Source of the DNA: Monocercomonoides exilis PA203
Taxonomy: Eukaryota > Protista > Preaxostyla
NCBI GenBank assembly: GCA_001643675.2
Contig: LSRY02000001.1
Span: 1-64,000 of the forward strand
DNA: 64,000 nucleotides
Reading direction: 5' to 3'
The notes under the pieces were generated by a model. That model was not told the DNA's origin and did not search any database. It saw nothing but the letters and a program-made list of their open reading frames with translations. Below, piece by piece: positions 5,735 to 34,794 of the stretch (positions within the stretch are counted from its first letter, which is position 1; each line of letters starts with the position of its first letter). A program made the translations under genes and the position numbers.

Positions 5735-8700
5735 TGTGCTTTTTGAGTGTTGGTTAGATGTGTGATTTGGATTTTGTCCTCTTTATTTATTTATTTATTT
5801 ATTTATTCATTCATTTTTTTAAAGCTTTTTCTTTTTCTTTTCTTTTCATTTGTGAATCATCCGATGCATCTGTTTGTGATATTGTTATTCTTTATGTTGC
5901 AAGGCTAACATGGCTCTTTCTAAATTGAGTTTGGTGCTGTTTCCGTTTTCGTGTTGCTTCCTGGGCAAGCACACAAAGTGAGTGTTCTTGCTGAGCGAGC
6001 GCTTTGACATTTTCTCGGCTGAAGAGAATGGTGTGCACTCAATCGTTTTTATTGATAGAAAAATTCGCATTTTATTCGTTTGCTTTTCTTTTTCTCAGAA
6101 AGACAGAGAATTGTGGCAGAAACACAATTTTTGCTTTTTTCTTTTTGGCACCTGTTTGTGTGTTTTTACCACATGGAAGTGCAAATGCCCTGATTTGTTT
6201 ATTTTAGAGAGAGAGAGAGAGAGAGAGCGCCAACGGAAGTGATGTGAAGAGCGCACATGGATGGGAACAGGACAATGAAATGGGGATGAAAATGGCTTGA
6301 AAACCACAACATCTGTGAATGAAGAAAAACGCCGAATACAAAGCGAGTACAAAACAAACAAACAAACAAACACAAAATGGAAGGATGCAAAAAGCTACAC
6401 GGCCGCAGCTTGGCGAGCCTGGTCCTCATAATAACAACAAAATCGGAGCTGGCAAAATGAAAACGGAAAACAGATAACAGAAAACATATGGAAGTATTCC
6501 CAAAAAAAAGACAAACAATTAATAAATTAATAAAACAACTGTTGCGTTTGACAAGAGGCACAGAATGAGATGCAGTCTGCGCTATCGTCATTTGTGAGCA
6601 TCTATCTTGCCTGCGTCATTTCCGCTTTATTTGAGCTGCAGATGTGACTTTTTCGCTTGCCAGCTTCCAAGCCAGTCATTGGGATGTGGAAGGGCTGGGG
6701 GAGAGCTGGATGGAAAAAGACAGGGCATGTTCAGCTGCTCGGAGAAGGATCAGGAGGGGGCAGCGGGATCTTCGGTGAAGGTTGTTGCGGAATAGGAGGC
6801 AGATTGATCGGAGGAGCAGTTGAGGTGCAAGGGGTGGTAACAATAGAGGGCATCGGAAGCTGTGAGGCTGGGAGCGCCACCGGGAAAGTGCTGGATGAAC
6901 TGGCGCTGGAGCTGGGCAGGGCTGGGGCGGGCATCTGGATTTTGGGATAGGCAGGCGTTGATGGTTTGGGCGAAGGCGGAGCAGCCTGCCGCGCCCAGAT
7001 CTGGCTTTTCGCCATTTGCTATCTTCTGGCCGGCAGTCTCGGCCTCGTACTCACCAAACGGGATCTGGAGCGTCACACACTCCCACAGCATCATCCCAAT
7101 GGAAAACGAAACAGAAGCCTTTTTGCCCCCATCTTCTTGTTGATTTGTAGTTCTGGTGCCTTCCATCGCAAACACTCGTTTCTGTTGTCTTCATCATCCT
7201 CAAACGCTGACGAAGGTGGGGGAGAGCGTGTGTATCTCTTGCTCCTTCTTGAGCCATCAGACGAAGATGTGACAATCGTGGATGATGAAATCGAAGATGA
7301 ATCTGAATCGGAAGAAGAACATTCAGAGTGCATGGCGATGCAGATGACCATGTGTTCTGAAAACAGCACAATGTGGGGGCTGAGGTTTGGCAGAGAGGGA
7401 AGATCGTCCTCCCCGTCTTCGAAGGAGAAGAGCGCCCCACCAGCCACCCAGAACAGGATTTGGGCAGCTGTCTGCTCCCTCTCCCGCAGAGTGCCAATCG
7501 CCATCTCTTTCTTCTCATTCTTTCCGTGCAGCAGCATGAACAGCGAATCCCTCAGATCCACAATCAGCTTCTCATGCGGTGACGAACAAGCCATTGCATC
7601 CACGAGATTCGACATCGATGAGGGTGGTTGGACACAGATCCTCCCCTCGAACAAATGTGGATTCTGTGTCTGAAGTGCCTGTGGTTGAAGTGGATGAAAT
7701 GGATGGTGAAGGAGTCTGCTTTCGAATTTTCTCTTCCTCATCTTTCTCCAATACCCATTCAGGAATCTTGTCTGAGTCCTTTCCCAGGATGTACTCAGTT
7801 GATCCACTCTCGGAGAGAAGATGTTCTGATGACTCTGAGTGTCCCAAGCTTTTCTCATACACCCTCTTCTTGAACCTCTCTTCATTCTTCTTCTCAGCCT
7901 CCCTCTCTGCCCTCCTCCACTGCTCCTCGGGAGACATCTCCATCGTCACCATCTCGAATGCCTTCGGATCCTTTTTGATGTTGTCATTCACAATCTCTTC
8001 CAGTTCTTCAGTTCTTCTCTTTTGCTTTCTCCATCGAACAACAAAAATAATAAAGCCAATTAACACGATAAATAATATCGCAACAAGCACAATCACAATC
8101 AACAACCAATAAGATTTTTCTTCTTTTCCCTCTTCAACAAGTTTTTCATCTCCATTTGCCTGACTTTCACTTTTGTTCTTCACAACAATGGCATCGGTGA
8201 AAGACGGACTGGAGGGGTTGCCGAACTGCAGCGCAACCAACACATCTGCCTTGTCAGATGCATCAGCTATTGCATTTGCTGGGATGGTGCTGGCGATCTC
8301 GTTCTCGCTCACATAATCGTCATGAGAGAAGAGGCCTTTCTCCACAGCGTGTTGATCGCCGAGGAGGAAGAAGAGGGCGTATGAGAGGTTGCAAGGGAGA
8401 AGGAGGGAGCCGTTGCAGCGGATCTGGATGTGGGTGTTGTTGTGATGGGTGATGGCAGCGCTGGTGAGTGTGGGGATGAAGAACGAGGATGCTCTTTGAG
8501 CAGGGATGCCGTGGAGCGAGCATGCGGTTGTGTGGATCCAGAGGGAAGTGTTTGGAAGGAGGCCGTCTCCGCTGGCGATGCTTGTGAGATGGAGGGTGGA
8601 GGCATTTGAGCAGATGATGTTGCGGCGGGCAGACTGGTAGTTGGGGATGGATGGGGTGTTGTTTGCGAAGAGGATCTTGCGTATGTGCGCAGACGCGGCA

Positions 8701-9875
8701 GAAAGAGAGAGGGCGCCCTGAGGCGCAGCGGTGAATGCAGCATCTGTGATTGCGACTGATGAGTCGGCGAAATGGACAAGAGACCCGTTCCATGTGCACA
8801 CGTTGTCTGCAACTTCTCTGGCTGTGTTGGCTGTGTTGGATGTGCTGGATGTGCATGAGGCAGCGGTACCTGTGCCTTGGAAGATGCATGCTTCGATCTG
8901 GATGTTTGCACAATTAGCAAAGTGCTCCATCGTTCCTGTTGCAGATGCAGATGCAGATTCAGATTCAGATGCAAATGTGGGTGTGGAAGTGGAAGAGGAA
9001 GTGGAAGAGGAAGTGGAAGTGAAGTTGGTGAAAGAGCAGTTGTGCTGGAGGATGGTTCCTGTGCACGAGGTGCAGTCAATGCCGCATCTCTTGGTTGTTG
9101 CATGGGCAACAGCCACCCCGACCAGCTTCAGCAGAGAGGCAGGTTCATCTGGAGAAGGCTGGGCGCCTGGGGTTTGGGGGCAGCCGCACGCGATGAATGC
9201 ATTATCTGCTGTGGAGTTGTGTATGGCGAGATCTCTGATTTCGATGGTGGTGCTTGGCTCGATGGCAAGCGCGGCGTTGCTGGTGGCAGTGCTGCTGATG
9301 TTTGTTTCTGTGCACACTGCAACAGCTGAGCTGCAGAAGAGGAGGAGATTGCGAGTTGTGGCGATTGAATGGAGGGCGGCTTTCCTCATCTCGAACACCC
9401 CGCTTGCCACAGAGATGAGTGTGGAGTTGAGGAGAGCTTCAGTTCCGGCAGATGTGAATGTGCATGAAACGACGAGCAAGCTGCCGTTGAGCTGGCGAAA
9501 GACAGAGTCGAGCTCGGATGCAAAGCCGGAGCCGATGGAGAAGTGGCAGCTGTCGAGCGAGCAATCGTTTGCAAAAGCGACGACAGCGTGGTGGGTTTGC
9601 TCGATTGGGATTGGAGTCTGGAGATGGACCAGGCAGATCAGCTTTGTTGCTGAGCGGAGGGTGAGGTCGGCGAGTGTTGTCTGGCGGGCGAAGGCGGAAT
9701 CGGTGTGGACAACGACCATGTTCCAAGTGCCGCTGTCGATGTGGCGGATGCTGTTGTCGATGGTTCTGCACATGTTTGAGGTGGAGCCGCACTGGCGCGA
9801 GTCAGTTCCGAGGAGGCAGGCGTGGATCTGGCCGGCCTTGAAGAAGGTGATGAGCGGGATGAGATCGAGAAGGGT
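5735..9875. repeat. Right arm of the inverted duplication
   Basis: Reverse complement of 1-4139. Confidence 0.97.
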
Positions 9876-12800
9876 GCTGTCGGTGAATGTGGAGCCGCAG
9901 ATGGAGTTGTTTGTCTGGAGAGAGGGCTGGGTGAAGTCGAGTGTGAATTGGGTTTCGTTGATCTGTGTGGCGACGTGGTCGGACCGGATGAAGATGTCTT
10001 TGCCTGCAAAGGCGTCGTTCAAGATGAAGCGGTCGTTGAGGATGCGGAGCGGGATGGGGTGGAGGAGGTCATCAGGAGCTGGAGGTGAAGATTGAGAATA
10101 AGATTGAGAATGGGATTGGTGCAGGGATTGGGGCAGGGATTGGGGCTGGGTGCAGTCGATCATGAGAGCACCGCCTTTGCCCTTTGTGCGCGAGCACACA
10201 CACTGAGTGAGCACACACGAAGCCACTTTCAGAGAGGATTCGGTGGAGCTGAGGCACACACGCACCGCGCCTCCTTCGTCGATGGTTTCTCCCACGCAGT
10301 TTGTGCAGAAGCAGGAGTCGAGCACACAGTCGATGCTCTGATACGAAGGGAGGGCAAAGACAGTTGAGTGATTGGCGCGGGCAGTGATGTTTGTGAAGTT
10401 GGAGTCTGCGATTGTGAAGGTCAACTGGCTGTTTGTGGGGCTGTATGTCTGCTTGGATGCGTCTTCAGCGGGTGCAGCGACCTCGATTATCCCTGCTGGC
10501 GAGGCATCCACCATGCAGGCGGACAAGTTCTGCACAGCTGCTTGGGATGCGGTTGCAGCGACAAGGAAAAAGGGATGGGCGAGAGTGATTGCAGAGACGC
10601 AGCAGTTGGCGATGTCGGCTGATCCGGCAAGCACAGACACAACAGCATAGCTGGTTGGAGAGGAAGGGGCTGTGGATGCAAAGGAGCAGGCAGAGAGGGA
10701 GAGGCGGGCAGAAGATGTGGCGGTTTGGAGAAAAGAGAGGATGCTGTGAAGCGAGGGTGGAAGAGAGAAGGAGAGGTTGGCGAGGCGGAGGAGGATGGAG
10801 GAGGCGAGGAAGGCTTTGTTGCTGCCTTGAAGGGCTGGCTCGTGCACTGCGACTGGTGTGCCATGGAGGTTGCCATTTATTAGGAGTTGTGGATTGTGGT
10901 GTGTAGCAGAAGGCTGGAGGTGGAGGAGGATGGAGAAGGTGGTGCTGTGTGTGACTGTGATTGTGGAGGCAGAGGATGGAAGGTCGGGGACAAACCGGAG
11001 CTGGAGAGCCTTGCTGATGGATCTGCAAGGTGCGACGTCAAAGCCGCAAGCGCTGAAGTCCCATCCGTCAGCGCCGTCGACATAGGCATGGGCAGAGAAG
11101 TTGGTCCAGAGGTACACAACGAGCGGCACAGCATAGTGCTCGCCGCATGTTGCTCTTTCCCAGCCGTTGAGCTGGTGCAGCGACTGGAAGGCTGGCCCGT
11201 CCATGTCCCATTTCAGGTGGAGCGTGTCGGCCACGCTGTCCAGCATCTGTCCGGCAACAAACAGGCTTTTCCCTCTCCAGGCGCGGCACTCGTCGAAGGT
11301 CATGTTTTGGAGCACAAAATCCATCGAGCCTTCGCCTCCCTCGATGAACATTCCACCCCCAAGCCCTCTTTCTTCGGTGTCCTCGTTTTCTGCATCGATC
11401 TCGATCTCGGCATCAGTCTCATCATCGGCATCGGTATCCGCCTCGGGTGCGGAGCTCGGTGCTGAACACTGTGTGAATGTGACTCCAGTCATGGTGAGCT
11501 TCCTGCCGTTCTCCACAGATGCATACAGACCGCCGCCTTTGAGGGTGTGTGCGCGGATGCAGCAGGATGATATGGTGCAATTGGACAGGTGCATTGTTGT
11601 GCCTTGCTGGGTGTGCTTTTCCGCGATCAGGCACCCGCCGTCTCCATTTGCCCGTCTCGGCCGTGCTATTATGGTGCTGTTGATGGTGATGCTGTGTGCA
11701 CCCGATATCAGGATCGGGGTGAAGGTGCTGAACTCGGCGTGTGTGCTGATTTGTGTGTTGGTGATGGTTGCGCTTCCCGATGCAAGGCGCATGATGTAGA
11801 AGATGACTGGGTGGGATGGAGCACTGTGAAAGTCTATGCAGCAATGGTCGAGCGTGAAGGCTGCAAGCGAGTGGATGAAGCCGTGTCGGCCGGTGCTCAT
11901 GGCAGTGGGGAGCAAAAAGCAGATGCTGGATGCGCTCATCTCAGCGGAAGCAGTGACAATGGCTTTGTTTGAGCACTGGCCTGCATCATGCACGTGCACA
12001 GCCTGGAGATGTGCTGTTGCAGAGGAGAGCAGGAAGGGGAATGTTTCGATTGTGATCTCGGAAGCGAGTGTGGAGTTTGCAGCAAGAAGAATGGTGGTGG
12101 ATGCAGAGGTGATTCTGTTGGATGCTGCGAAGTGGACGGTCTCGCAGGCAAACACAGATGGGCCGCAGTGCAAATGATCTGTCCCGGCGAGTCCGTCGAC
12201 ATAGATGTTGTTGTCGTGGTGGCAGAGATATATCTCGAGCGGGATGACAGGCTGGTCTGCACCATCCTCAGAGCCGCTGAGTCTGGATGGATCGGCAAAG
12301 CACTGGGTGTGGTCGATAAACTGAAGTGTGGTTGTGTTCACGATATCAATCAGCAACACTCTGCTTGTGCATCTGAGAAAGAGGTCTCTTCCAACCGCTG
12401 CTCTGTTTGGTGTGGAATTGGAGAAGCACACGCCGCTGCTTATCTGGAGGAGTGCTTTGGCGTTGTCGATATGCACCATCATCCCTCCGCCCTTTCCGCC
12501 CTTTCCTCCCGTTCCTCCCGTTCCCTCTGTATCGGGCACACAGCAATCAGCGAAAGCAGCCGAGCCGTTCACAACCATCTCAGCATCCTTGTCTGTCAGG
12601 TGCACACACACCCCTCCGCCGCACGAGCCATCCTGGCAGGCGGTGCAGCTGGAGAAGGATCCACCAGTGATGCACACTTGCGATCCAGCGATGAGGGAGC
12701 ATTCGAGGCCGCTTCCGCTTCCACTTTGCCGGGTGATGGCTGTCAGGTTTGTGGAAGTGAGTGTGACGCTCAGTGCAGCCTCGGCATTCACAGTCAGGGC

Positions 12801-14864
12801 AGCCACAGATGAAAGGCACATAGGGCCAATTTCCACCGAATCGAACAGCACATGCCCTGCAGCCACAGTTATGACGGATGCAGCGAATGGTGCATCGGGC
12901 AGTGTTTCTGCTGCAGTGATTGTGCAGTGGTCGACTTCGAGGCATCCCTGCATGTCTGTCAGGTGGAACAGGTGGGAGTGCAGCGAGGCGCTTGCATTCC
13001 TGCGGAATGCGAGGGAGCTGAAAGTGGCACTGCCAGTTGTGATTTGCACGAGGGCTGTGCTGTCTGTGGCATCAGCACTCAGCACTGTTTTGTCAGCGCC
13101 AGCGCCGCTGAAGGATATGGTGAGTGTGCACACATTGATCCTTGTTTCGTGGCACACACACTCCTCGACTGCAACAGCCTTTGTTTGGAGCAGCGGGTTG
13201 GCCACGCCCACTGCATATCCCACGGTTCTGCATCTTCTGCCTTGGATGTCTCCTGCATCAGCCGATCCGCATGCTTGGTGGTCGATGCCGCTGGCACTGT
13301 TGACGAGGATAGGATCGAAGAAAGTGTTTGGAATCCAGGAGCTGCATTCTTGCATCCCCTTCACAACCCTGTTTGTGGAGCCAGCTGTTGTCGAGCGGCA
13401 GAGCACAAAGCACTCATCATTGATGTTTGTCCAACCGCTGTCGATATACACATCGTGACCCATTTTTGCAGCAGAATTGTTTTCAAAGAAGCAATAATAA
13501 ATAAATGAAGTTCGAACACCACCTGAATCATCCCAGCTGATTCCTCCTCCATGGTTGTCACTCGAACAGTTTCTGAAACAGCAATCTTTAACAATTGCCC
13601 ATGAATTTTCATAAAAACCTAAACAACCTCCGTGATATATTCGAGATTGTTTAGTGCAATTCAAAAAGACGATTGATTCAATAGAGCATTGTGCATTGCT
13701 ATTGTTGTATGAAGTCATACTTGAACCAACGTGTTGTGTTGTGCATGATGAAATATTACAATTTTTGATTATAAATGAATTCATATAATATAAATCTGCA
13801 ACACCACTCGAATGACCAGAGTTGCAAAGCGAAAATGATGTATTTGTAATAATTGTGTTTTTTCCTCCTGTTCTGAAGGAAACAGCGCCTCCACAATACG
13901 AAGAATTGCAGTTATTGAACATGCAATGTGAGATACTCAGTACTCCCGAAGAAGTGAAGCGAATTGCTCCACCATAATCACTTGCCAACGTAGAAAAGTG
14001 GCAATCAACGAACGTTGCATCACCTGTTGAAATGTTCTGTCTTAACATTGAATGATCTCCAATCACTGGCTGGGCATTATGGTGTCTGTGGCAGTTCTCA
14101 AAGGAAGTGTTTGCTGATGAGTGAGTGAAAGATTTGGAGTTCAGTGCATGGAACAAGCCTCCGTTGTATGGGGATTCGACACATTTCACGGAGCATCCAG
14201 ACATCACTGTTCTGATTTCGCGGGTGGGGATATCGAGGGGCTCATTCATGTTTGTGGTGTGGGTGATGTTTGTGAAGCATGAATGCAGCAGCTCAACATC
14301 GGATATGCCAGATGTGGCGACAAACGGAGAGCCAGCACAGACGCAGCAGGAGTCGAAGAGGGATGAGGATATTGAGACTCTGCAGCTCGCTGAGCTGGCA
14401 GGATGGTCAGCACCGCTGGCAATGGATGAAACAGGGGCAGCTGGGTTAGAGACTGCCAGCGAGATGTTGAACAGCCACAGGGATGCACATTGCAGCTGGG
14501 CAACATGGTGGGTTGATTTGGCGGTGTATGAGAGAGTGCAAGATGTGAATGTGGCATTGCTGCTGGTGATGGCAAGGCAGGCGTGTGGTGCACAGCATGC
14601 AAGGGATGTGTCAGACAGCAGGAAAGAGGTGTTGGCCATTGTTGCACAGTGGCGGCTGAGCAGCTGAGTTTGTTTTGGCGCACTCAACAAACCCTTGAAA
14701 AGGCATTGCTGTTTGTTGTTGGATGTGCCAATGGACTTGTTATTGAAAGGCAAGTGTGCTTTGCATGGTGAATGTTCCGAGCAGTTGGCAGCGCCATTTG
14801 ATTCGCATGCAATGAAGCACAAAAACAAGAAAGTCAAATGGCACTTCATGGATGCTTTCAGCAT
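6750..14864 (-). CDS. Giant type-I membrane protein: signal peptide, Cys-rich right-handed beta-helix/pectin-lyase-like (GGAI/GGGL) repeats, single TM, cytoplasmic TKL-like pseudokinase; frameshifts at ~7623 and ~7122
   Basis: 2430-aa ORF 7572-14864 with hydrophobic N-terminus, repeated GGAI/GGAV/GGGM motifs and TM at ~8035-8110. The kinase-like tail continues in ORFs 7091-7885 and 6750-7175. Confidence 0.88.
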
Positions 14865-20711: not shown

Positions 20712-22298
20712 AGCGAAATTGGGTTTGTTTCAAAATGTATTTATTTTTATCAATTGAATTCATATATATACTTAAAAATCTTTTCAAATATGAAATTGTG
20801 GGAAAAGATACTGATAAAACTATAAAAAAGGTCTTGATAAAAAAATGTCAAAATACAATCATAACACTATTTAACTTCCTTCTTAAAAAATTGTGAGAGC
20901 ACCACATCATGGGTCATTCACTCAGCTGAACAAATGGTAAATTGTGAAATGATACGCAAAGGTGTGAGTGAGAATATTTTAAAAGAATTGATAATTGGCA
21001 AATTGAAAATTTTTCCAAAAGTTGAAAAAACATACGTTTGAAAAACAGAAAAGAGATTAGCAATCAAATTATATATTTTTATTATATTCCAAATTAAGAG
21101 ACGATCCTATAATAATTAAACGTTTATATCATTGTTATTCTGCACCAACGAATTTTAAAGGAGATGAGCATTTATAATTGATGAGTGAGAGAGAGAAAAA
21201 AGTGAAATAAATTATTTCTTTATAATAAAAACCCTTGTGAATTTATAAATCGAAAAAAATAAATTGGTTGTCCAGACACTAATCTTGTATGAGTACAGCA
21301 AAATGAAACTTCAATATTCCTCAAGGATGTGTGAAATTTGTCCTTTCCGAATCAACCATTATTGAAGCCGCAAAATCAATTTATCCAGTTTTTAAAAATC
21401 AAGAAGGATGCATATGTTGAAGAATTCGAGAATGAGTGTGAGAAAAAATGGGCTTCAAAAGATTTTTTTGCTTAAAGAAATATAATTGTGTTTTTTTCAA
21501 AACCTAATTAAACATTCTCAGATTACAAATTAAATTGGATATCAAATCTGTTCACGAACACAATTGATACAATAATATTATGTTTTGTGGCCTCAAACAT
21601 ATTTCAATAGCAGAACCAATTTTTAAAATAGATTTTGTTTACAATAAGTTAATTATAAGCAAATAATTTTTGAATTAAAATGACTGAAGATAAATATTTT
21701 GCCCTACACAAAAAACTTTGAGTTAGAAGTGTGCATTGAAAATGGATATCGAACAGTAAAGTCTGACAAAGAAAAAATAATATCCTCCTGCCTTTATTAC
21801 TTTTGTTCCACAACAACAAACAAATCAATGAAAGCTGAAGAGTTGATGAGAGTTGGAGTTGATGCTGATATTTTGGAGCAGATTTTGCAAACTGCAAATT
21901 GATATTTCAATGACTTCAAATTCATAAATTATCTTTTGGAGAATTTCAAGTAATGAAAAGAAAAAGAAAAAGATGAATTGAAAGATGAGAAAAAAAACGG
22001 TTGAGATTATTGGGTTTGCAATTTCTAATTATCGAAATTACTTTTTTTCAGAGCAATTCATTATGCAGTTTCAAATTAAAAGAATTAGGACTACTTGTAT
22101 AAAGTTTATATCGTCATTCAATCTTCAAAAAAAACATGAAGCATTCACTTCCGACAATAGTAAACGAGGAAATTGATAAATCATTTTGAATTTCTTGTGA
22201 CTTTTTTTTCATAAATGGATTTAGCAACAATAAACATTTCACAATAACAAAATATCAATTTCCCCTATTTGAAAAACTGCAAAATAAAATTCATTCAA

Positions 22299-25200
22299 GG
22301 CATAGGTGTAAATTGTGCCACTTTCATTTTGAATTTTTTCAAAATTTGAATATTTAATCGTTTATCTACACAATATAACTAAGCGATTCAAGGAGGGAAA
22401 TTTCGAAATTCGATCAAAAAAATTTCTCTCAAAAATTTTAATTTTCGGCACCTATAATTTTATATTTTTGATCACATTTTATTAAAATATCAATATCTTG
22501 GTTTGCAAAGATCAAATAAATTTGTCGATTCAATGGAACAAGAAGAAATATAGCGTTTAATGTTTGTTACGAAGAATTATTGTCAATATTATTTTGTATG
22601 CTGCTAATATTTATGGATTCAATAAATACCGGATTCTTAAGTTTTTTTAAAAATAAAGCAAAATACTACAATAACACCTTCTAAGCAACAATGGAAGAAA
22701 ACATATGCAACGTGTGATAAATATTTTTTATTGTTTATTAAATTTTTTTAATGCTATTTTTTTCCCCTTTTAAATTGAAATGCATATGAAAGGTTCGTGA
22801 CAGTGAAGATCGATTGCTAACTGCATTTTTTTTGATTGAGTTCTGGATGGAGGAAGATGAGAAGAGAAGAATGCTGAGAGTGAGGTTGAATGGGCAATGG
22901 AAGAGCGGGTGAAAACAACATTTAATTTTTTCTTTATTTGGAATTGGGTTTGAAAGGCGAAGGCGTGGTGTGGTGTGGTGCTTGGAGTGGATGATGCTGG
23001 GGTGAGAGGTATTTGGAGAGAGGCAAACAGGGGACGAGGGGAGTGAAGGGAAATGAAGATTTGTGGAGGTATTTTATTCTTGTTTCTTTATTTTCTTCAT
23101 ATATTATTTTTTATTTTTATTTGTATATTTTTGATTTGATTGATGTGTGATGCGATCAGGTGTTGTCAGAAGCGCTGGGGGAGCATGAAACATGGGATGT
23201 GGAAACACTCCTTTTTTATGAGCATTCCTAAAAGAAATTTGGAGAAATGGGCAACTGAAGAGCGTTTGGCAGATTGAGCAAGACGGAAAAAACTGAAGAG
23301 AATGAGGAAAGATATTTTTGTGGAATTTTTTTTTGCAAAAATTTTTTCGGAAGCAGCAGCAGAAGAGGCAGAAAAAAGTGAATTCAAGCTTGTTTGGATA
23401 TTTTACGATATAGCACAAAGAATCATGCGGCAAATAAGTGAAGGGAAAGGAAGAATTTCTGTGAATGAATTTCATTTCTCCTCTATTTACCGATTTATCT
23501 CTTCACCTTTTATCCCTTTTGTATCCCTCTAACATCTGACGTTTTTCAACATCATTACAGCAAATGAGGCATGCTCACCTTCAACCGCAATGTCAACCCA
23601 AACCTCATGTATGGTATACAGCTGCTCATTTACTTCTGTTTGCAATATGTATGATGGAGGGATTGTCCCTTCCCTCGACAACCCCTAAGCCTCTTTGACA
23701 GCTTCAAAGACCATGTTTATAAGGTGTTGTCGTACAAGAAATGTGAAATGTGAAGGAACTGCAAATAAAAAATATAAGCCAGGGAGACAAAACGAAACAG
23801 ACAATGGACCGAATACATTCACGTGGTGTCAATGGAATGGATCAAATACAACAGGAGAAGTTGACTCAAATACAGACGGAATATCGAGTGGAGGTGCGAT
23901 TTGCATGTCCAATCTCAATTTCGGAAAACTTTCAGTGAAATATTGTTCATTCAATGACTGCAATGCACATTGGGACGGTGGAACAATTATACGTTATTCG
24001 ATTAATTCAGTCAAGATTGAAAACAGCTCATTCAGTTTATGCAAAGCAAAATATTCAACAGGAGGGGGAATGTATATCAGATCAATTTTGAAATGCTTCA
24101 TGATGAGCAATTGTGAATTCTCAAAATGCAAATAAAGAAACGGAGGAGGAGCAATATTACTTTTTGATTTCAATGAGTCAAAATCTAATTGTGCAGCAAC
24201 GGAAAGTGGTACTGTGGAGAGCGCTTGTGTGTTTGAGTGTTTTTTCACTTCGAGTTCTCTTACAGGTTCACATGGTGGAGGGATGTGTTGTGCAACAGTT
24301 CCAGCTGCATTCAAAATGCTGAGCATCCAATTTATTTCGTGCTTGGAAGTGTCACATGGAGGAGGAATGAGATTTGATCCATATCAATCAACAGCCCCAA
24401 ATTACAATCGTAATTTTTATATCTTCTTCTTCTACGATTGCAGATGCACAACCAATTCCACTCCATATGGCCATGACGTGTATTTTAATGATGGAAACAA
24501 TCTCTTCTCTTCGAATAACCCATTCTTTGAATCATACACAACGAATAGCGATGCAAATAGATTATGCGATGCTTATTATTCGAGAGGTTGGAAATATCAG
24601 CATACAGAAAAGAAGGATTGGTTGAAGGAAGAGATGAAGGATCGGTATGTTGGAGTGAATGGAAACGACTCGAATAATCTGCGTGGGATGAGTGAGGCAA
24701 CACCTTGCAAGACAGTGGGGCATGCAGTGGTGTCGAGCATGGCACAGCTGAGCTCGACAATCACGTTGCTGAGTGGGAAGCATGTGAGCGAAGGGGCGAC
24801 GATCAGTGTTGGGGAAAAGAAGATAATAATAACAGGGAGAGGGAAGACGGTGAGTGTGATTGGGACAAGTGCGCTTTCTACCTCTTCGACAGCGCTGTTC
24901 AGCGTATCTTCTGGTCAACTGGAGGTGGGGCATGTGGGGATCGATCACAACTCGATGAGAAGTCCATCGCCGAGTGTGTTTGTGGTGTCTGTGGGGAGCG
25001 GGACACTTTCGCTGGAGGATGTGGTGATCGACTCTTCGACATCAGGAGGGAGTGGAATCTCGTCATCTGTATTTGAAGTGACGCTGAGTCAGCTGAAGAT
25101 GATTGATGTGGAGATAAAAAAGGTCAATTTATTTGCATCTCCTCAAAGATTGAGTTGCCAACTTAAAGGGAACCGTAGTCAATACCTGATCCTGGAAAAA

Positions 25201-26129
25201 GCTGTTGCTAAAACGAAAAGTGCTTTTTTTTTATTAATATTCTTTGCTTATTTATTGAACTTTTCATTTCCATTTTTCTAAAAAAGAATACTTTTAAAAT
25301 AACGAAATGTTAGAATTAATGTTTTCATTCAAAACGAACTTTCACCAATTCGTAACTAGATCCGAAACAAAAACATCACAAAACAATTTTCTGTGAATTT
25401 TCGAAGACAGTTCCATCCCCTCTGTTCATAGCATAATTCTTACGATCCATTTCCTTCACTTTCCTTCTCTCGTTCAAACAAGCTTCATCCTCTATGTTCT
25501 CCATCTCCCTCTTCTTTTCTCACCTTTCCAAAAAGACAACTGCTCCTCAATCTCACTTAACAAACACATCTGCTCCAATCCAGCTTTTCCTTCCTCCTTT
25601 CAAAAATGGAATTTCATACCAGTTCCAACGAATCCGTTACAAAAAGAGTTTATAAATCAATAATAATTAAATACCTATAATAATCTCATAATAAACATTA
25701 ATTATCATCAATCAAACATGCAAATTCCTATCAATTTAGTTTTCATCTTCTATTTATCAAAAGCGAAAACATATATAACGCTAATACTTGTGAATAACTA
25801 AATAATCGAATCCATAAATATTAGCAGCATACAAAATAATATTGACAATAATTCTTCGTAACAAACATTAAACGCTATATTTCTTCTTGTTCCATTGAAT
25901 CGACAAATTTATTTGATCTTTGCAAACCAAGATATTGATATTTTAATAAAATGTGATCAAAAATATAAAATTATAGGTGCCGAAAATTAAAATTTTTGAG
26001 AGAAATTTTTTTGATCGAATTTCGAAATTTCCCTCCTTGAATCGCTTAGTTATATTGTGTAGATAAACGATTAAATATTCAAATTTTGAAAAAATTCAAA
26101 ATGAAAGTGGCACAATTTACACCTATGCC
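22299..26129. mobile_element. Non-autonomous TIR element (Pack-Merlin-like no. 1) with 322-bp TIRs carrying host gene fragments
   Basis: 22299-22620 is the reverse complement of 25808-26129. Termini GGCATAGGTGTA...TACACCTATGCC. No transposase inside and no clean TSD (tcattcaa vs ttatattc). Confidence 0.85.
23560..25121 (+). pseudogene. Captured internal fragment of a surface-receptor family gene (N-terminal beta-helix region)
   Basis: Motifs YDGGIVPSL, GGAICM, GHDVYF and PCKTVGHAV match YNGGLFHAL, GGAIRF, GHDVYI and RCRTVGYAV in the 14864 gene. In-frame stops at ~23686 and 24133; truncated at both ends. Confidence 0.85.
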
Positions 26130-26311
26130 TTATATTCATTCAGCCCAATGATTATTTGCGATTGAAAATGAATTAAAAATCAGCCAAAAATGTTCTTGCA
26201 CACAAAAATGTGACTATAAGCGAATGTGATTATATTCGACTTGATAATATCCGGTTCAGACTGTTCACTACAATTCAAAACCAATATTTCCTTAAATATA
26301 ACTTCTCATTA

Positions 26312-26707
26312 CAGATATTGCACAAAATACATGACATCGCACAAAATACCGGACAAGATCGTTTTCTCAATAACCACTCAAAGAGAAAATCTGATAATAT
26401 TCCTCCAAATATATATAAACAAAACTAACTCATTTGCCATACCGGGCATTCATTTCCATGCAGACTGAATATTTAAAAAATAATTTTTAAAATCTCCGAG
26501 AAACACATAATCAAATTTCTCGGAGATTTTAAAAATTATTTTTTAAATATTCAGTCTGCATGGAAATGAATGCCCGGTATGGCAAATGAGTTAGTTTTGT
26601 TTATATATATTTGGAGGAATATTATCAGATTTTCTCTTTGAGTGGTTATTGAGAAAACGATCTTGTCCGGTATTTTGTGCGATGTCATGTATTTTGTGCA
26701 ATATCTG
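26312..26707. mobile_element. Foldback MITE (Tc1/mariner-pogo type): 192-bp perfect arms, 12-nt loop, TA TSD
   Basis: ta|CAGATATTGCAC...GTGCAATATCTG|ta. Arms 26312-26503 and 26516-26707. Sub-terminal direct repeat GCACAAAATAC occurs twice per arm. Confidence 0.92.
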
Positions 26708-27980
26708 TATTTCTAATCAAAAAAGAAAAAAAAATGTTTCATCTCCGGATTTTTGAAAAATATCTCTTTTAAATAATGAGGAAAAATATTGTTTTCATTT
26801 ATAAATTTATTTTGTTCACATTGTTCGAAAGCCTTCCAGATGACAAATCAATTATTCTTCTAAAAACAAAATTATGCAAAGATAATGAAGTGATATTAAA
26901 TTGACTAATGAGGTTTATTCCATTTGCTATAACCAGAAAATGTACAAAGCGAAGAAAAAATTTTTCGATTCAAGTTCTGGATGAATGTTATTATTCCAGG
27001 TGTTTCAGATGAGGAAAATATTGCTCATTATTGGGAATAACTCCTTTGAAAAAAAACAATTCATATGGGTGATAATTTTTTAATCCTATTTTTTTTATTC
27101 AAAAATTTAGGTTAAAGGATTCACTTTGAATTATGCAAACCAAACACCGAAAAAATAAAACTTCTTTCAAAGACACTCAATGGGAAGGGGGAAAAACCGC
27201 ACAAAAGACGAAATTTGTGCACATGGGTTGAAAAATTAATACTTGCTTTGTGCATCGCAAATATGTATTTCATAGTATCCAATTCTTGTTCTGTAAAGAA
27301 TATATTTAATGAATTTTCGCTTCAGCAATTTTGAAATGGATTCTTTCCCATTTTCATTTATGTTTTTTTTTATGGAACAAATGGAACACGAAAGAATTTG
27401 TGCAAATTGTCAAATTTTAACTCTTTCACAAAAGGAACTTTGATTTTAAATGATTATTAAAACATAATAATCCATTTCATTCGAAACACTTCCGTTATTA
27501 TTAGATTTGAACTTTTTGGTTTTTTTCTCCAATTTTTATTTTTGCATCAATTGTTTAGCAATTATGTAAAAAGAATAATTTCATTGATGCTGTTTGTGAA
27601 ATTTTTACGTGTTCAATTAAAATGTGAAAACATTTAGCTATTTGTTCAATGAACTTTGTAAAAAAAAATTGTTTTCTTCTTGTTTTAATTAAGGATTCCA
27701 ATACTTTTATGCTATCATTTTATTTTTCCTTTTAAATCAAGTGAAGATAGATCAAAATTTTCACATATATATCAATCGAAAAATAGTTTGATAAAGTTTT
27801 GTGCTTTATGAAGTTTGAAATGAAATATATATATGCTTATAAAAAAGAATAATGAAAATATATTTCAAATTCATTCAAATACAGAAAGCCACAAAATAAA
27901 AAAGGATCATTTGCTTCCCTTCATCTTTTCCCTTTGACATTCATTAAATGTGTCTGAAAAACTTCTTTTCCTTATCACAT

Positions 27981-28247
27981 GGGGTGAAAATATGGATTTT
28001 CAAGCTTTTTATGCACAAACAATGAAAAAATTGTTTCACTTATAACATTATAAAATTTAATCAGATTTCAAAACAAATTAGATTTTCATTATTGAAAACA
28101 AACGTCATTGATGAAATAACAAAATGTTTTGTGACATCACATGTATTTCAAAAAAAAACCCATTTTTTTTCAATTTTTGTATCACAACAAGTTCATCGAA
28201 GGTACATAATTTTTCATGAAAATGCCTGAAGTCAAATATTTTGTCCC
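27981..28247. mobile_element. ~267-bp MITE, GGGG-terminated family, copy A
   Basis: Colinear, diverged similarity to 33003-33268. Short TIRs GGGGTGAAAATAT / ATATTTTGTCCC. Confidence 0.8.
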
Positions 28248-30307
28248 ATACATGAAACTATTGAGCTCATGCTCGAGCTTCGTCATTATCACCGTGTCAA
28301 TATTTGAACAAAATCTTTTCAAACAAGCTGATTCATATGAAATTGAATTGGTGCCCATCATTTTTGCAGTAGTAAACTATCTCAGATTATTCCTATGCGC
28401 TTTCTCATAAGAAAACAATTTCTTATCCGAAGCGCATAGCATTCATGAACGTTATCTTCAATTAATAAGTTTGTGAATGTTCAGAAATATGAATCGATTG
28501 TAGTAACTGCTCAGTTGTCCGAATGCAATAGTCATCATCAGTTCAATTAATTTGCGTACTCCTCAATCGTTTCTTATCCTCAAGTGAAAACATGTTTTGC
28601 TTGTCATATCACCAAACAAATAACTCCACATTTTTCTTGCCTAAGTCTATAAAAATCCGTACGACTTTTATCTTTGTCTCACACGATTCCAGAATGGCCT
28701 ATGCATTTGACACTTCCATTAGTTGAGCATGTTGGTATATAGAACACATTTGTTATTATTCTCTCGTCAAATTGTTTCTGTTCAGCTTTTTCCTTGAAAC
28801 AATTGGTTCAAGGACATTGCTCATGATTCCTATTTTGCGTTTTGATTTTCCACGACAAGCTCTCCATATTCTTTTTGCAGCACAATTGAACATATAAAAC
28901 ATGAGATACCACAAAAACACAATCAGCTTCATTTTTCCATATAATAGTGCTTCATTATATGAGTTGTATCAGGTGTTTTTAATTAAGCTTCAACTAGTTT
29001 GCCTAACTTTCAGTTATTCAAAAGTTTACTTTTGTTTATCTTTTTAATGAATAATTAGATCATTTTTTGATTGAGAAGTGAATAAAAGTTTTTAAAACGA
29101 AATTCCACATTTTTAAGTTGATTTTTTTAAAAATTATGCAATCTGCCTTAAGCAACTCATCATTTGAAGTATCAATATGAGTAATTGCACCACAATCAAC
29201 AAGCACATTTTCATTTTTGTAACTTGCTTATTTTTGTTGATGTTTCAAGACAAAAACAAACAAAATTTTGTTTGTTTAACAATGATTCTTTCCTTTGAAG
29301 CATTTAAAACCAAGAATGCGAAACAGAGGATGTTTTGCAACGATTAACAAAAATTTGACATGCGAACTTACCAAAAAAACCATTGACTTAATGGATCTTT
29401 CAGAAACGGGAAAAAATGTCATGCATTTTTTGTTGAGCTGAAAAAATAATGTGAGATAAACTGTATTGGGCAAAGTTCATATTGATTGAGTTGAAACATC
29501 TCACAGTTTGAAAAGCTAATTTTGTTCTCTTGAATCAACGAAAATCGATGTCATCTCAAAGAAGTTTTGAATTTAGTCATTAGTTCGTAGAATTATTTCT
29601 ATTCTTTCAGTTCACAACAAATTTTGTGAAATAGTTTTATTCTCGAAAACACAATGGAAAAGTATTCCAATATGAACTTTGCAAATTAAACGGATAACAA
29701 AACTTTCAAATCTTCATTTTTCGAATGAAGCATGCACATATGTTGATAATAGTTGTTCAAATCATTTCAAAATAAATTGCATAAATAAATTACAATTGTT
29801 TTTTTTACAAAAACAACGAGAAAAAAACCCGTTACAAAATTAAAAACCCGGATTTTTTTTGAATGGCAACTGCATTTTGTTTCATTCAAAAAGGTTCAAT
29901 TGACCGGTTTGTTTTATGTTTCATTGAATAATTAATGAACGTTTTGTGATTTCATGAATTGAGATTTGTATTAGAAAATAATTTTTGTATTTTTTCAACG
30001 AATTCAAAGATGTCAATGTGAAATGGCATTTCTCTAATTGTCTAAATTGTTGATGTGATATTTATTTAAATAAAATGATAGTTGATAAAGACGCAACAGA
30101 AGTTTCTTCCAATCCGATGCTCAGTTTATTCCATCCTTTGTCTTTTCTGAATTCAGTGAATAAGAATAACAGAAATTATTACATCAAACATTCAATACAA
30201 GACAAACAATTAATTTCAAGCTAAACGAATAAAAGTTGGGCAATAAAATGGATATGATTTTCAACAAAAAAAATTATTAAACAAACTTATTTACGTTTCC
30301 ATCTATT

Positions 30308-32878
30308 GGCATAGGTGTATATAAGGTACATTCCCAATACTTGGTTATTCTTCAAAACATTGTGATAAATAAAAAGTAGATTTAATAGTAAAACATTTGC
30401 ATGGACTAGAATTTTGAAATTCTTTTTGATCCTTGAGAAAAATCAATTTTTAAAAATCACCCATAAATCTGAGTATTATTTCTAATTATTGATAAAAATT
30501 GATAATTTTAAACTAATAAGCAGCTAAGAGGTCGTTAATCATTATATACTCTTATTTTATCCATGATTTTTCAAAAAATAAAACATTCGAAAAAATAAAT
30601 TAAAAAATAAATAATTTGATCAATTCCACAATTATATTTTTAATATCCAAAAAATTAGAATTTGCTTTCTTTCATCACTCGCAATATAAAAGTTCTGTTA
30701 TTTAACTTTATTTTTATTAATTATATCCAATCTTTTGTGAAAAGAAGATTCAATGTAAATATAACTCAAACAGTTTTCATAATGTTACATTAAATTATAG
30801 AAGATGTCTTTGTTCATAATAATTGGTTTTCTTTTTATATAAGCAGCGATGAATGATCACAATTAATAATGAATAATATTTTAATATTTTAGCTTTATAA
30901 TAGTTTATTTGCGATATTTCAATTTTTATTTTCTCTATTATTTAATTTTTTTAACAAGATGCAGAAGATAATCGTTTTCTTTTTATTCATTGCCAGTTTC
31001 TTTTCATATTTATATGGCGTTTTTGTTTAAAAGACAAATGAATTTGAAAAATAAATATTTTTTTTTAAAAAAAAAGAAAATTTGTTCTTGTACTTAATTT
31101 TAAAAAGTTATTAAACTTAAAATTTCATGCAATCATTTCAATTCAAAATGTCAAGCACTTTTTTCAATGTGTTCTCCTCATATATATATATGATATGATT
31201 GCTGCAACACTGAAAAATAAAAAAAAAATTCGAGTTATTTTATTGAAAAAATCAAAACACAATACTTTATTCTTGCTTCTTCTTCAAAGTTTCTCAGCCC
31301 TTCTCAGCCTCTCTTTCTGCTCTTTGCCACTGTTCCTCAGGATACATCTCCATCATCTCCACCTCAAATGCCTTCAAATCCTTTCTGTTGTTGTCATTCG
31401 CAATCTTTTGTAATTCCTCGTTTCTTCTTTTTCCTTTCTCCACCGAACAGCCAGAACAACTGATGCAACAAGAACAGTCAAAAACAGAACAACAAATATC
31501 ACAGCAATAATCGCTGTGCATGATGATTTTCCTTCTTTCCCTCCATTAACAATCCTTTCATATCCATTAGCTTTGGGATCACTTCGATTCTTCAGAATGA
31601 AAGTATCAGTGACCAATGGCTTATTCGAATCCCCAAACATAATGCTCACTCTCACTTCTGCTTCATCTTCCGCCTCACTCATCCTCTCCTTTGGCATCCT
31701 CCATTCTGCTGCAGTCTCTGACACACATCCACTTTCACCAAATCCATATTTTTCAATCTGTTTTTCTTCTCCAATTTGCTTCACAATCATGAACGACAAT
31801 TTCCATGCAAGAAGGAGCTTCCCTTTAAACACAACCTCCATTTTTTCTCCTTTCTCATTTGTTTCAACACTTTACAAAACAGGAATGAAGAAGGCAAAGT
31901 CTCTTAAAGAAACACTCAAACTGTTCATAATGATTGAATTACTCTGATGAATTGTCACAAATCCAATCAGATCAGTGTCATTTAGGTTATCGCACAAATC
32001 TATTCCGCATATCGTATTATTATGAGTGCAATATCCATCTCGAAGATTATACTGGAATTGCCTTTCATTGATCTGCAATGTGACGTTGTTTCATTCTGAA
32101 AAATTTAATTTCCAACTTTTGCTGTGTATTAATTTTCACCTTTTTTTGCCAAAAAAAACTTCTCTTCCTATTTCTCTGTAGTTGTTGTGGTGATTAACAC
32201 CAGGCTTTTAACATTCATTTTATTTGTGAAGATAATATTCGATATTTAATATGTTGAATAGAAATATTTAATAAAATATTGTTAATCATTAAAAATAATA
32301 CATTCATACGTTTTAACAATGCTTCTTTATTCATGATCATCATTGTGTAACATAAACATCCTCAAACTGCACAAAAATTTTCATATTAAAAATCATAATC
32401 AAAATACATAAAGATTTGAATGATATATAGATAATTATTCATCACACACTTTAAAGCTATATTAATATATATGACTTGTTATATGTTTTCAAACAAGGGT
32501 TCAATTCTTGATGAAAGAAAGCAAATTCTAATTTTTTGGATATTAAAAATATAATTGTGGAATTGATCAAATTATTTATTTTTTAATTTATTTTTTCGAA
32601 TGTTTTATTTTTTGAAAAATCATGGATAAAATAAGAGTATATAATGATTAACGACCTCTTAGCTGCTTATTAGTTTAAAATTATCAATTTTTATCAATAA
32701 TTAGAAATAATACTCAGATTTATGGGTGATTTTTAAAAATTGATTTTTCTCAAGGATCAAAAAGAATTTCAAAATTCTAGTCCATGCAAATGTTTTACTA
32801 TTAAATCTACTTTTTATTTATCACAATGTTTTGAAGAATAACCAAGTATTGGGAATGTACCTTAAATACACCTATGCC
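30308..32878. mobile_element. Non-autonomous TIR element (Pack-Merlin-like no. 2) with 370-bp TIRs and 8-bp TSD, carrying a receptor juxtamembrane/TM fragment
   Basis: 30308-30677 is the reverse complement of 32509-32878 (one mismatch seen, at TIR position 14). Termini GGCATAGGTGTA. TSD catctatt on both sides. Confidence 0.93.
31270..31895 (-). pseudogene. Captured fragment of a surface-receptor family gene (stalk, TM and cytoplasmic juxtamembrane)
   Basis: FFIPVL*...GKLLLAWKLSF...ILKNRSDPKANGYE...TM...VRWRK...EMMEMYPEEQWQRAEREAEK matches FFIPTL...GSLLLPCNLSY...VVKNKSESQANGDE...VRWRK...TMEMSPEEQWRRAEREAEK of the main gene. Confidence 0.9.
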
Positions 32879-32883
32879 CATCT

Positions 32884-34794
32884 ATTCGTTATCATCATGC
32901 TGTATTTTAAATTTTTTCCTTTCAGGTTGAGTGGTTTCTTCTGCGCTTTCTTTATGCTCACTTTTTCATATATCTTTTTCGTAATCTTCGTCATCTTCAT
33001 ATGGGGTAAAATATGGACTTTCAAGCTTTTTATGCACAAAGCATGAAAAAATTGTTTTTCTCATAACATTATAAAACTCATTTGGAATTTAAAATAAATT
33101 TGATTTTTATTGTGTATACAAACATCATGATATAATTACATTATGATTAGCGACATCAAACGTATTTTAAAATATAAATTCATTTTTAAAGTACTTTTTG
33201 ATGTCAAAAAGTTGATCGAAAATGCATAATTTTTCAATGAAAATGCCTGAAGTGAAATATTTTGCCCCATATATAAAATCGTTATCAATTTTTACCTTTC
33301 TTGTTCTGATAATTCTTTTGGTAAAATTGCCACTGTCAGAATTGGTGCAGTGATCTTCGTCATTGAATAAATTATCTTCTGTTTGTTTGCTTTCATCAAC
33401 GCTAGGTTTTTCATTGATTTTCATATCCATTTTACACTAACTTGATTTAACTTTGCGTTTTGGGGAAAATGAACCAAACAATTCATTGTTAACTTCATCT
33501 GAAGAAATTACTAAAGAAGATTTTGAAGGAGATCCACTTATTTTGGAGAGAACTTGCGAAGCTGCTAGTGGCCAGATTCCTGTATTGAGAAAAGCAGCTT
33601 TGATTACCGATGGAGTGGTCGCTTCAGCGATTGCGTCTGGTAAAACCATAGCAAGAGCCTTTCTATATGAAGAACATGAATTATCGATTGGAACATAGAA
33701 ATTATTGAATAATTTTCATTTCTATCTGGCAAATATCACATTGTCACAGGGCTGGAGGAGATGGGTCATGTTAGGGGGAAATGTTTTTATGAAAATTCCG
33801 TTATTTTCAGCTTCCATAATGACTTTTGAACATGAATGGGTAGAATGGTTGTCAAGAAGAAGATGAGCCTTTTTCGAAGATGTCGATTGTATTTTTTGAT
33901 GAATGAGAGGAATCCAATTTTGAAGCATGATGACTTTGAAAATTTCAGTAGTTATCCATCCTGAAGGTACAGGAATATAATTTATATTAAAAAATTTCAA
34001 TTAGAAAACTCTTCAGGCATTTTTTACTTTGGATAAAGAAAATAATGAGGAAGGCAGGAACCATCAGAACACACACAAACGCAAAGAGTTGAGTTGGCAA
34101 TTTTTCGAGGAACTGGAGGAGAAGAAGGGATCTGATCTTTCAAACAGATCACTAATTTTGACGAACTTTCTCCAATTTTCACGGAAGATTCGTCAAAATA
34201 AAAAACATTGTAAACTTCGATATTGTTCACTTCTACGATTTCTATCACTTCTTCAAACCAATTAGTCACCTTTTCAGGGCTCTGTGATCGAATCTTTGCA
34301 ATTTCCAGTGGTCTCGCGAAGGCCGCCATTAAAATAGAGCTTCTATGAACCAAATAATAAGATAATTTCGGATGGAGTTTTTCGTTTTCTTCTTCATTTG
34401 TTGATTCAGTATTTAAAATGTCAATTGCCTAAAAAACAAAGATAAAAATATTTTTTTATAAAAAAACGAAAACCATTTCCTGTATGTGCTTCATTCGAAC
34501 TACAACTCCTTCTGATAATATAGACAAGACCTGATTTTCGATTTTTTCCAGTTTCTCAGAATTTATAAGCGATGGTCTTCGTTCTTTTCCAACATCTCTG
34601 TTTTTCTTTTCTGCTGTTTTGCCTCTGTACCAAGCCTGCCTTGTAATTACTTTCGCTTTGACCGCCACGTTCACTGTCAATGGATATGTTTTCTTGATTT
34701 CAAAAATTTACCTCGATCTGGAATGGATTGTGCGGTATTCTCTTGTAGCAGCAATCCTAAGAAGTTCTTCTGAAGAAATTGATTTCTTTTCCAT
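32884..34794 (-). pseudogene. pogo/Fot-like (DD35D) transposase pseudogene, second family; intron ~34429-34472; MITE inserted in its tail
   Basis: FYFDESS, SGWITTEIF, LLLDNHSTH and PPNMTHLLQPCD (DD35D). Stops and frameshifts. Confidence 0.88.
33003..33268. mobile_element. 266-bp MITE, GGGG-terminated family, copy B, ATAT TSD
   Basis: atat|GGGGTAAAATAT...ATATTTTGCCCC|atat. Removing it plus one ATAT restores the host reading DNDFIYEDDEDYEKD. Confidence 0.85.

What the first reader, a model, noticed from the sequence alone, without database searches (positions are those of the whole stretch)
22299..32878. Pack-Merlin-like system: long-TIR non-autonomous elements carrying pieces of the host surface-receptor family
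Seen: two elements (22299-26129 and 30308-32878) share only the terminal 12 bp GGCATAGGTGTA, have otherwise unrelated near-perfect 322- and 370-bp TIRs, and encode no transposase. Each contains a decayed fragment of the receptor-pseudokinase family found intact at 6750-14864: one the N-terminal ectodomain, the other stalk+TM+juxtamembrane. Element 2 has an exact 8-bp TSD. Known: GG termini with 8-9-bp TSDs characterise Merlin/IS1595-IS1016 elements, and gene-capturing Pack elements are well described for MULE, CACTA, hAT and Helitron. Inference: these are Merlin-mobilised gene-capture vehicles that could shuffle modules of a hyper-expanded receptor family. I do not know of this being described for Merlin.
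Basis: partly seen in the sequence, partly recalled or inferred. Interest (0 to 1): 0.9.

Follow-up and report, generated by a model that had tools for sequence, protein, structure and literature searches.

The report
Receptor-carrying long-armed Merlin transposons
These are two real jumping-gene copies in the gut protist Monocercomonoides exilis; they lack their own transposase and carry broken pieces of the organism's largest surface-receptor gene family, pieces that the whole transposon lineage has carried for a long time and that were later overwritten by other family members, a gene-carrying habit known from other DNA transposon groups but not found described for eukaryotic Merlin elements.

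Summary
Both elements are real: 22299-26129 (322-bp TIRs, no exact TSD) and 30308-32878 (370-bp TIRs, exact 8-bp TSD, empty site in seven paralogous pogo copies). The genome is Monocercomonoides exilis. The 12-bp end occurs 116 times, mostly in inverted pairs; 12 of 19 elements examined have an exact 8-bp TSD. Larger partners with the same ends encode DDE-intact Merlin transposases (PF12762); no MULE domain was found in the genome. This long-TIR clade is not among the seven published 1.5-kb Merlin families of this species. Correction: the transposase-bearing partners carry receptor pieces too. Element 2 is a deletion derivative of such a partner, not a fresh capture, and neither cargo comes from the gene at 6750-14864. 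Cargo interiors are closer to host paralogues (75-82%) than to sister elements (63-71%), and the cargo tree rejects the TIR grouping (AU p=2e-9): few old captures, then overwriting. Nothing shows flow back into host genes; only 2 of the 150 closest receptor copies lie inside the listed end pairs. The scan has already noted this system on other DNA of this genome. New variant of a known kind.

The parts
22299..26129 (.). Element 1: 3831-bp non-autonomous long-TIR Merlin, subfamily A; no exact TSD
   Evidence: sisters at C25:746988, C16:1018744, C21:568657, C25:909396
22299..22620 (+). Element 1 left TIR, 322 bp
   Evidence: identical to right TIR
25808..26129 (-). Element 1 right TIR, 322 bp
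22826..23316 (+). Segment upstream of the cargo frame, also found at non-element loci on C53 and C80; 91-93% identical to sister elements
23317..25121 (+). Element 1 cargo: broken N-terminal ectodomain piece (beta-helix/Pmp-like by language-model features), at least 3 in-frame stops, cut off at 25121
22289..22297 (+). 9-mer ATTCATTCA, repeated at 26134-26142; possible displaced target duplication (uncertain)
   Evidence: sequence; joined empty site not found
30300..30307 (+). Left TSD of element 2 (CATCTATT)
   Evidence: single copy in 7 exact empty paralogues
30308..32878 (.). Element 2: 2571-bp non-autonomous long-TIR Merlin, subfamily B; deletion derivative of a cargo-bearing autonomous type
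30308..30677 (+). Element 2 left TIR, 370 bp (1 mismatch to right TIR); 89% identical to TIRs of transposase-bearing elements
30678..31063 (.). Left subterminal region shared with non-autonomous sisters L033, L034, L040, L043, L048 (75-79% with TIR)
31300..31892 (-). Element 2 cargo: stalk, TM helix (31455-31511) and juxtamembrane piece, frameshifted and truncated before the kinase remnant
31913..32102 (-). Second cargo scrap (inner ectodomain), collinear with the right arm of autonomous element L047
32509..32878 (-). Element 2 right TIR, 370 bp
32879..32886 (+). Right TSD of element 2; holds the stop codon of the interrupted pogo-type transposase frame
32879..33979 (-). Decayed pogo-type (DDE_1) transposase whose 3' end element 2 inserted into (insertion site, not part of the element)
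   Evidence: PF03184 E 2.4e-12
6750..14864 (-). Reference receptor-pseudokinase gene (family member, not the donor of either cargo; frameshifted as assembled)

Best explanation
Both are non-autonomous members of a long-TIR clade of Merlin (IS1595-type DDE) cut-and-paste transposons of Monocercomonoides exilis, moved in trans by 7-13-kb partners with the same ends and leaving 8-bp target duplications (membership shown; trans-mobilisation inferred). Long ago two lineages each took up a piece of the giant beta-helix receptor-pseudokinase family: lineage A an N-terminal piece, lineage B/C a 3' half (inferred from shared junctions). Short elements such as element 2 arose by deleting the centre, transposase included (shown by collinearity). 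Because more than a thousand host paralogues resemble the cargo, repair or gene conversion has since overwritten cargo interiors with other family versions (mosaic shown; mechanism and direction inferred), while arm-to-arm conversion keeps each element's TIRs identical and can lengthen them to 2.7 kb (inferred). The cargo here is a dead passenger.
For: 116 exact ends (control 7), 38 inverted pairs among the 100 listed. 12/19 exact 8-bp TSDs, 2 more at 7/8. PF12762 frames of 520 and 542 aa with intact D-D-E inside L042 and L047, 410 aa in A-type L035; 13 of 20 close transposase copies on fully listed contigs lie within about 10 kb inside such an end. These transposases form one clade (100/100) apart from short-TIR Merlins. 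All four transposase-bearing elements read carry receptor pieces. Element 2 positions 1606-2571 are collinear with L047 across the TIR-cargo junction (78%; 89% terminally) but its TM-side cargo is 62-70% to all sisters and 79-81% to host loci; AU rejects its TIR group in the cargo tree, p 1.9e-9. Element 1 versus sisters: 91-93% at 528-1018, 68-71% at 1501-2000, Fisher p about 1e-19; its cargo is 74-78% aa to host genes with 1600-4400-aa frames and 63% to sister L050.
Against: No donor above 82% was found for either cargo, so overwriting is not caught in the act. Two dead copies diverge faster than a dead copy and a live gene, which inflates the gap at protein level. The 3' ends of B-type cargo fall in one low-complexity stretch but the sequence beyond differs, so that breakpoint may be a hotspot, not one event. 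One other TIR-cargo conflict (L037+L042) was not rejected (p 0.12). Element 1 has no TSD. Only 19 of at least 38 pairs were read.
Confidence: 0.68

Rival explanations
1. Classic Pack model: empty long-TIR shells repeatedly and independently capture fresh receptor fragments, each element from its own donor gene.
For: Cargo interiors differ between sisters and are nearer to host genes; the two window elements carry non-overlapping modules; L034/L048 also hold a DEAD-box-like scrap (E 6e-4, below cut-off), so new captures do occur.
Against: Same region, orientation and junction in many sisters and in the autonomous partners; neither cargo comes from the neighbouring gene (24% aa; 50% nt in the stalk).
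Confidence: 0.14
2. The elements are an engine for the receptor family: they move modules into, or found, functional receptor genes, or their fold-back transcripts regulate the family.
For: Receptor pieces sit beside every long-TIR-clade transposase read (7 of 7, counting L057, L064, L065) and beside none of 12 short-TIR Merlins; some cargo frames are long (736 aa with TM and kinase C-lobe in L046); about a quarter of the closest receptor copies occur as inverted pairs, like the mirrored arms of L042.
Against: Window cargo is broken; 2 of 150 closest receptor copies lie in listed end pairs; 1 of 30 outer flanks is receptor-like; the receptor palindrome at the window start has no Merlin transposase in its spacer; no RNA run was available.
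Confidence: 0.12
3. One capture per lineage and plain neutral decay, with no later exchange; the uneven identities reflect mutation-rate or alignment effects.
For: Shared junctions; no near-identical donor found; AT-rich DNA aligns unevenly.
Against: Branch lengths from element 2 to L047 are about 0.14 in the TIR tree and about 0.5 in the cargo tree; AU p 9e-6 against pairing them; adjacent segments differ by 22 points of identity.
Confidence: 0.05
4. Chance pairing of solo repeats around host pseudogenes, or an assembly artefact.
For: Element 1 lacks a TSD; 5 of 19 elements lack one; no read spans a whole element.
Against: 76 of 100 listed ends are paired and several singles have one-mismatch partners; TSDs flank whole elements; identical 3.6-kb copies sit at two sites with different TSDs (L031, L032); short-read contigs bridge element 2's left junction; empty sites exist.
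Confidence: 0.01

Closest known systems
Merlin families F1-F7 of Monocercomonoides sp. PA203 (Lopes et al. 2021, PMC8101967)
   Same: Same species, PF12762 DDE transposase, GG ends, 8-bp TSD.
   Different: Those are about 1.5 kb with 23-29-bp TIRs and no reported cargo; none begins GGCATAGGTG in the supplementary alignments. This clade has 196-2726-bp TIRs, 2.6-13-kb elements, longer transposases and receptor cargo.
Pack-MULE, Pack-CACTA (PMC6379663) and animal Pack-TIRs (PMC8277862)
   Same: TIR-bounded, transposase-less elements with host gene fragments, moved by a related autonomous element; long TIRs as in MULEs; a minority with mismatched TSDs.
   Different: Merlin transposase; cargo almost all from one gene family, present in the autonomous partners too, and overwritten later. 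The Pack-TIR survey's main text does not mention Merlin.
Bacterial IS1595-family transporter IS (MTnSag1, tISCpe8; PMC5704250)
   Same: Same transposase family, 8-bp target duplication, passenger gene beside the transposase.
   Different: 25-bp IRs, 1.7-2 kb, intact and useful passenger (lincosamide resistance); here long TIRs and broken eukaryotic cargo.
Foldback-type elements (own knowledge)
   Same: Very long, near-perfect inverted arms that include internal sequence (L042, 2.7 kb).
   Different: No tandem subrepeats were looked for; arms here hold coding-derived cargo and the transposase is Merlin.

Membership tests
Merlin (IS1016/IS1595-related) | TIRs with 5'-GG ends | tested here: met
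   All 19 elements; definition from PMC8101967
Merlin (IS1016/IS1595-related) | 8- or 9-bp TSD | tested here: met
   Element 2 and 11 relatives exact 8 bp; element 1 itself has none
Merlin (IS1016/IS1595-related) | DDE_Tnp_IS1595 transposase in the family's autonomous members | tested here: met
   L042 E 7.5e-21, L047 E 1.6e-19, A-type L035 E 6.7e-12; D, D, E motifs present
Merlin (IS1016/IS1595-related) | TIR length in the described range, 24-462 bp | tested here: met
   322 and 370 bp here; three autonomous relatives exceed it (848, 1583, 2726 bp)
Merlin (IS1016/IS1595-related) | Transposase binds and cuts these ends | not testable with these tools
   needs a binding or excision assay
Pack-type element | No transposase, internal DNA derived from host genes | tested here: met
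Pack-type element | Cargo moved with the element to new sites | tested here: met
   L031/L032 99.9% identical with different TSDs; element 2 TSD and empty sites
Pack-type element | Identifiable parental gene; interior host-derived instead of inherited from the autonomous element | tested here: inconclusive
   Best donors only 79-82%; autonomous partners carry the same region
MULE / Pack-MULE | MULE transposase partner | tested here: not met
   PF10551 finds nothing in the genome; partners are PF12762
hAT | hAT transposase partner, CA/TA ends, short TIRs | tested here: not met
   Ends are GG; Pfam on partner frames gives PF12762 only. No genome-wide hAT search was run.

The most novel reading that the evidence does not exclude
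Long-armed Merlins are two-way relays for the largest gene family of this protist: they are overwritten by receptor paralogues and also donate patches back or seed inverted receptor pairs, acting as a mobile pseudogene library for surface-protein variation.
Probability: 0.12. Interest if true: 0.8.

Novelty: new variant of a known kind. Interest (0 to 1): 0.48.

Why it matters
It adds Merlin to the eukaryotic superfamilies that carry host gene pieces and defines an undescribed long-TIR Merlin clade. It shows part of what lies in the 35% unclassified repeats of M. exilis that overlap kinase genes (PMC8767320). The cargo is a dated record of exchange between a transposon and a family of over a thousand genes, so direction of gene conversion is directly testable. 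If flow also runs back into live genes, this would be a route to surface-receptor variation in a gut protist.

Tried and rejected
MULE partner: none in the genome. Solo-repeat pairing: rejected. Local capture from the gene at 6750-14864: rejected on identity. One composite element from 22299 to 32878: no shared TIR beyond 12 bp and element 2 has its own TSD. The palindrome at the window start as a Merlin: no transposase in its spacer. Empty site for element 1 under a displaced-TSD model: not found. An exact shared 3' cargo breakpoint: suggested, weakened. Enrichment for receptor cargo: 18/19 elements against 1/30 flanks looks strong, but the elements descend from about two captures and the family fills roughly 12% or more of the genome (my estimate), so no preference is shown. 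Close relatives of the transposase outside this species: none with a name or context. No RNA or long-read run was offered.
Full report
Source. The genome is 82.3 Mb in 101 contigs. A homologue of the transposase is annotated as Monocercomonoides exilis, and the size fits the 2021 Nanopore assembly (PMC8767320; size from own knowledge). Kinase-like genes are its largest family and overlap the unclassified repeats.

Observation. GGCATAGGTGTA occurs at the four stated ends and nowhere else in the window. TIRs are 322/322 and 369/370 identical within each element and unrelated between them past base 12 (z = -1.3). Element 2 has an exact 8-bp TSD. It sits on the stop codon of a decayed pogo-type transposase, and seven other loci carry the uninterrupted site with one copy of the 8-mer (control 0). 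Short-read contigs of two runs bridge its left junction, and one contig shows an empty-site join; all four runs come from one sample and none spans the element. Element 1 has no exact TSD. Element 1 carries a broken N-terminal ectodomain piece, with beta-helix/Pmp-like features. Element 2 carries stalk, TM and juxtamembrane sequence plus a small upstream scrap. The family's tail matches only the C-lobe of PF07714, which fits a pseudokinase.

The family. The 12-mer has 116 exact hits (control 7); the 100 listed give 38 inverted pairs of 2.6-13.2 kb, and several singles pair with one-mismatch ends. I read 19 elements. Twelve have an exact 8-bp TSD, two match at 7 of 8, five have none. TIRs are 196-477 bp in most and 848-2726 bp in three transposase-bearing ones. 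There are two unrelated TIR groups: A (element 1) and B/C (element 2).

The transposase. PF12762 hits lie inside several pairs. L042 and L047 hold frames of 520 and 542 aa with the three acidic motifs intact; A-type L035 holds a 410-aa frame about 44% identical to them. Of 20 close copies on fully listed contigs, 13 lie within about 10 kb inside an exact end. C40:833747-840620 has A-type ends and a 518-aa frame but could not be read. PF10551 (MULE) finds nothing. These transposases form one clade (100/100) apart from the short-TIR Merlins. Lopes et al. described seven Merlin families in this species, about 1.5 kb with 23-29-bp TIRs; none has these ends.

Where the cargo came from. Eighteen of 19 elements match the window's receptor, including all four with a transposase. 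In L042 the 3' half of a receptor is mirrored in both arms around the transposase. Element 2 is collinear with the right arm of autonomous L047 over 1606-2571, across the TIR-cargo junction, then skips about 1.1 kb and resumes in the stalk; its left 756 bp match five non-autonomous sisters. So it is a deletion derivative. Element 1 shares its left 2.6 kb and right 0.74 kb with L044 and L050. Captures were therefore few. That also removes the case for a preference for this family: 18/19 elements against 1/30 flanks counts about two independent events, and the family, with 1245 first-look TM-region candidates of mostly 2500-4200 aa, fills roughly 12% or more of the genome (my estimate).

Later exchange. 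Notes from other windows suggested that cargo is swapped; I tested that here. Element 2's TIR is 89% identical to L047's, yet its TM-side cargo is 62-70% identical to every sister read and 79-81% to host loci. The cargo tree rejects its TIR group (AU p 1.9e-9) and its pairing with L047 (p 9e-6); a second conflict was not rejected (p 0.12). Element 1 is 91-93% identical to two sisters at 528-1018 and 68-71% at 1501-2000, and its cargo is 74-78% identical in protein to host genes with long open frames against 63% to sister L050. The mosaic is shown. Gene conversion or templated gap repair from host paralogues is my inference; no donor above 82% was found. Perfect TIRs within an element whose nearest sister is 91% identical suggest arm-to-arm conversion (inference).

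Does it shuffle the family? Not shown. Both cargos are broken. Only 2 of the 150 closest receptor copies lie in listed end pairs and 1 of 30 outer flanks is receptor-like. What keeps the idea alive: receptor pieces lie beside all seven long-TIR-clade transposases read and none of 12 short-TIR ones, and about a quarter of the closest receptor copies occur as inverted pairs.

Comparison. It works like a Pack element and is a member of Merlin by ends, TSD and partner transposase. Host-fragment carriage is known for MULE, CACTA, hAT and Tc1/mariner (PMC6379663, PMC8277862), and bacterial IS1595 elements carry passengers (PMC5704250). Searches for Merlin with gene capture returned nothing relevant; the library lacks most subscription papers and Repbase was not available.

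Limits. No long reads or RNA were available. 

Verdict. Real, a new variant of a known kind, interest 0.48. The scan has reported the same system on other DNA of this genome.

Noticed in passing
window:26311-26707: About 400-bp perfect fold-back (194-bp arms, 12-nt loop) with CAG...CTG ends flanked by TA; looks like a Tc1/mariner-type MITE, 180 bp right of element 1.
   Followed up: partly
window:1-9875: 4.2-kb arms at 98.9% identity around a 1.4-kb spacer, holding two converging receptor 3' halves, cut by the contig start; arms differ mostly by small indels. Similar inverted receptor pairs are common genome-wide (about 19 pairs among 150 hits). No Merlin transposase in the spacer.
   Followed up: partly
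window:7665-8177 and G000:C73:7099-7611: Identical receptor TM region near the start of two contigs; the C73 copy has a 2720-aa open frame while the window copy is frameshifted. Possible contig-end overlap or indel errors.
   Followed up: no
window:15920-16378: Decayed Merlin transposase, outside the long-TIR clade, 1 kb upstream of the receptor gene.
   Followed up: partly
window:32991-33273, 27980-28257, 21448-21715: About 280-bp MITE family with TGGGG...CCCCA ends and TA flanks; very high depth in reads; one copy interrupts the same pogo frame as element 2.
   Followed up: partly
window:35608-35850: Imperfect 240-bp hairpin element; a relative is inserted in A-type element L045 (3733-3972).
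   Followed up: no
G000 many contigs: Sister family with GGCATAGGTCTA ends: about 20 pairs of 2.4 kb plus transposase-bearing copies; several carry the same N-terminal ectodomain piece as element 1.
   Followed up: partly
L034, L048:1079-1552: Non-receptor cargo with a DEAD/DEAH-box-like motif (E 6e-4, below cut-off) in two sister elements.
   Followed up: partly
G000:C16:1001003-1014345 (L064, L065): A B-type autonomous element (1003764-1011583) sits between two inverted copies of a related transposase, each with receptor sequence beyond it.
   Followed up: no
G000:C25:1201151-1214079: Nested pair: a 3.9-kb element inside a 12.9-kb transposase-bearing element with mirrored receptor arms.
   Followed up: no
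window:18936-20615: Interrupted frames on the minus strand that read like another pogo-type transposase by eye; Pfam gave no hit on the pieces tested.
   Followed up: partly
window:42694-53931: 3745-aa frame with leucine-rich repeats and a PP2C-like domain, the layout of a PHLPP or adenylate-cyclase-like protein.
   Followed up: no
window:36968-40972: 1334-aa glycoside hydrolase family 2 protein with F5/8 type C domain.
   Followed up: no
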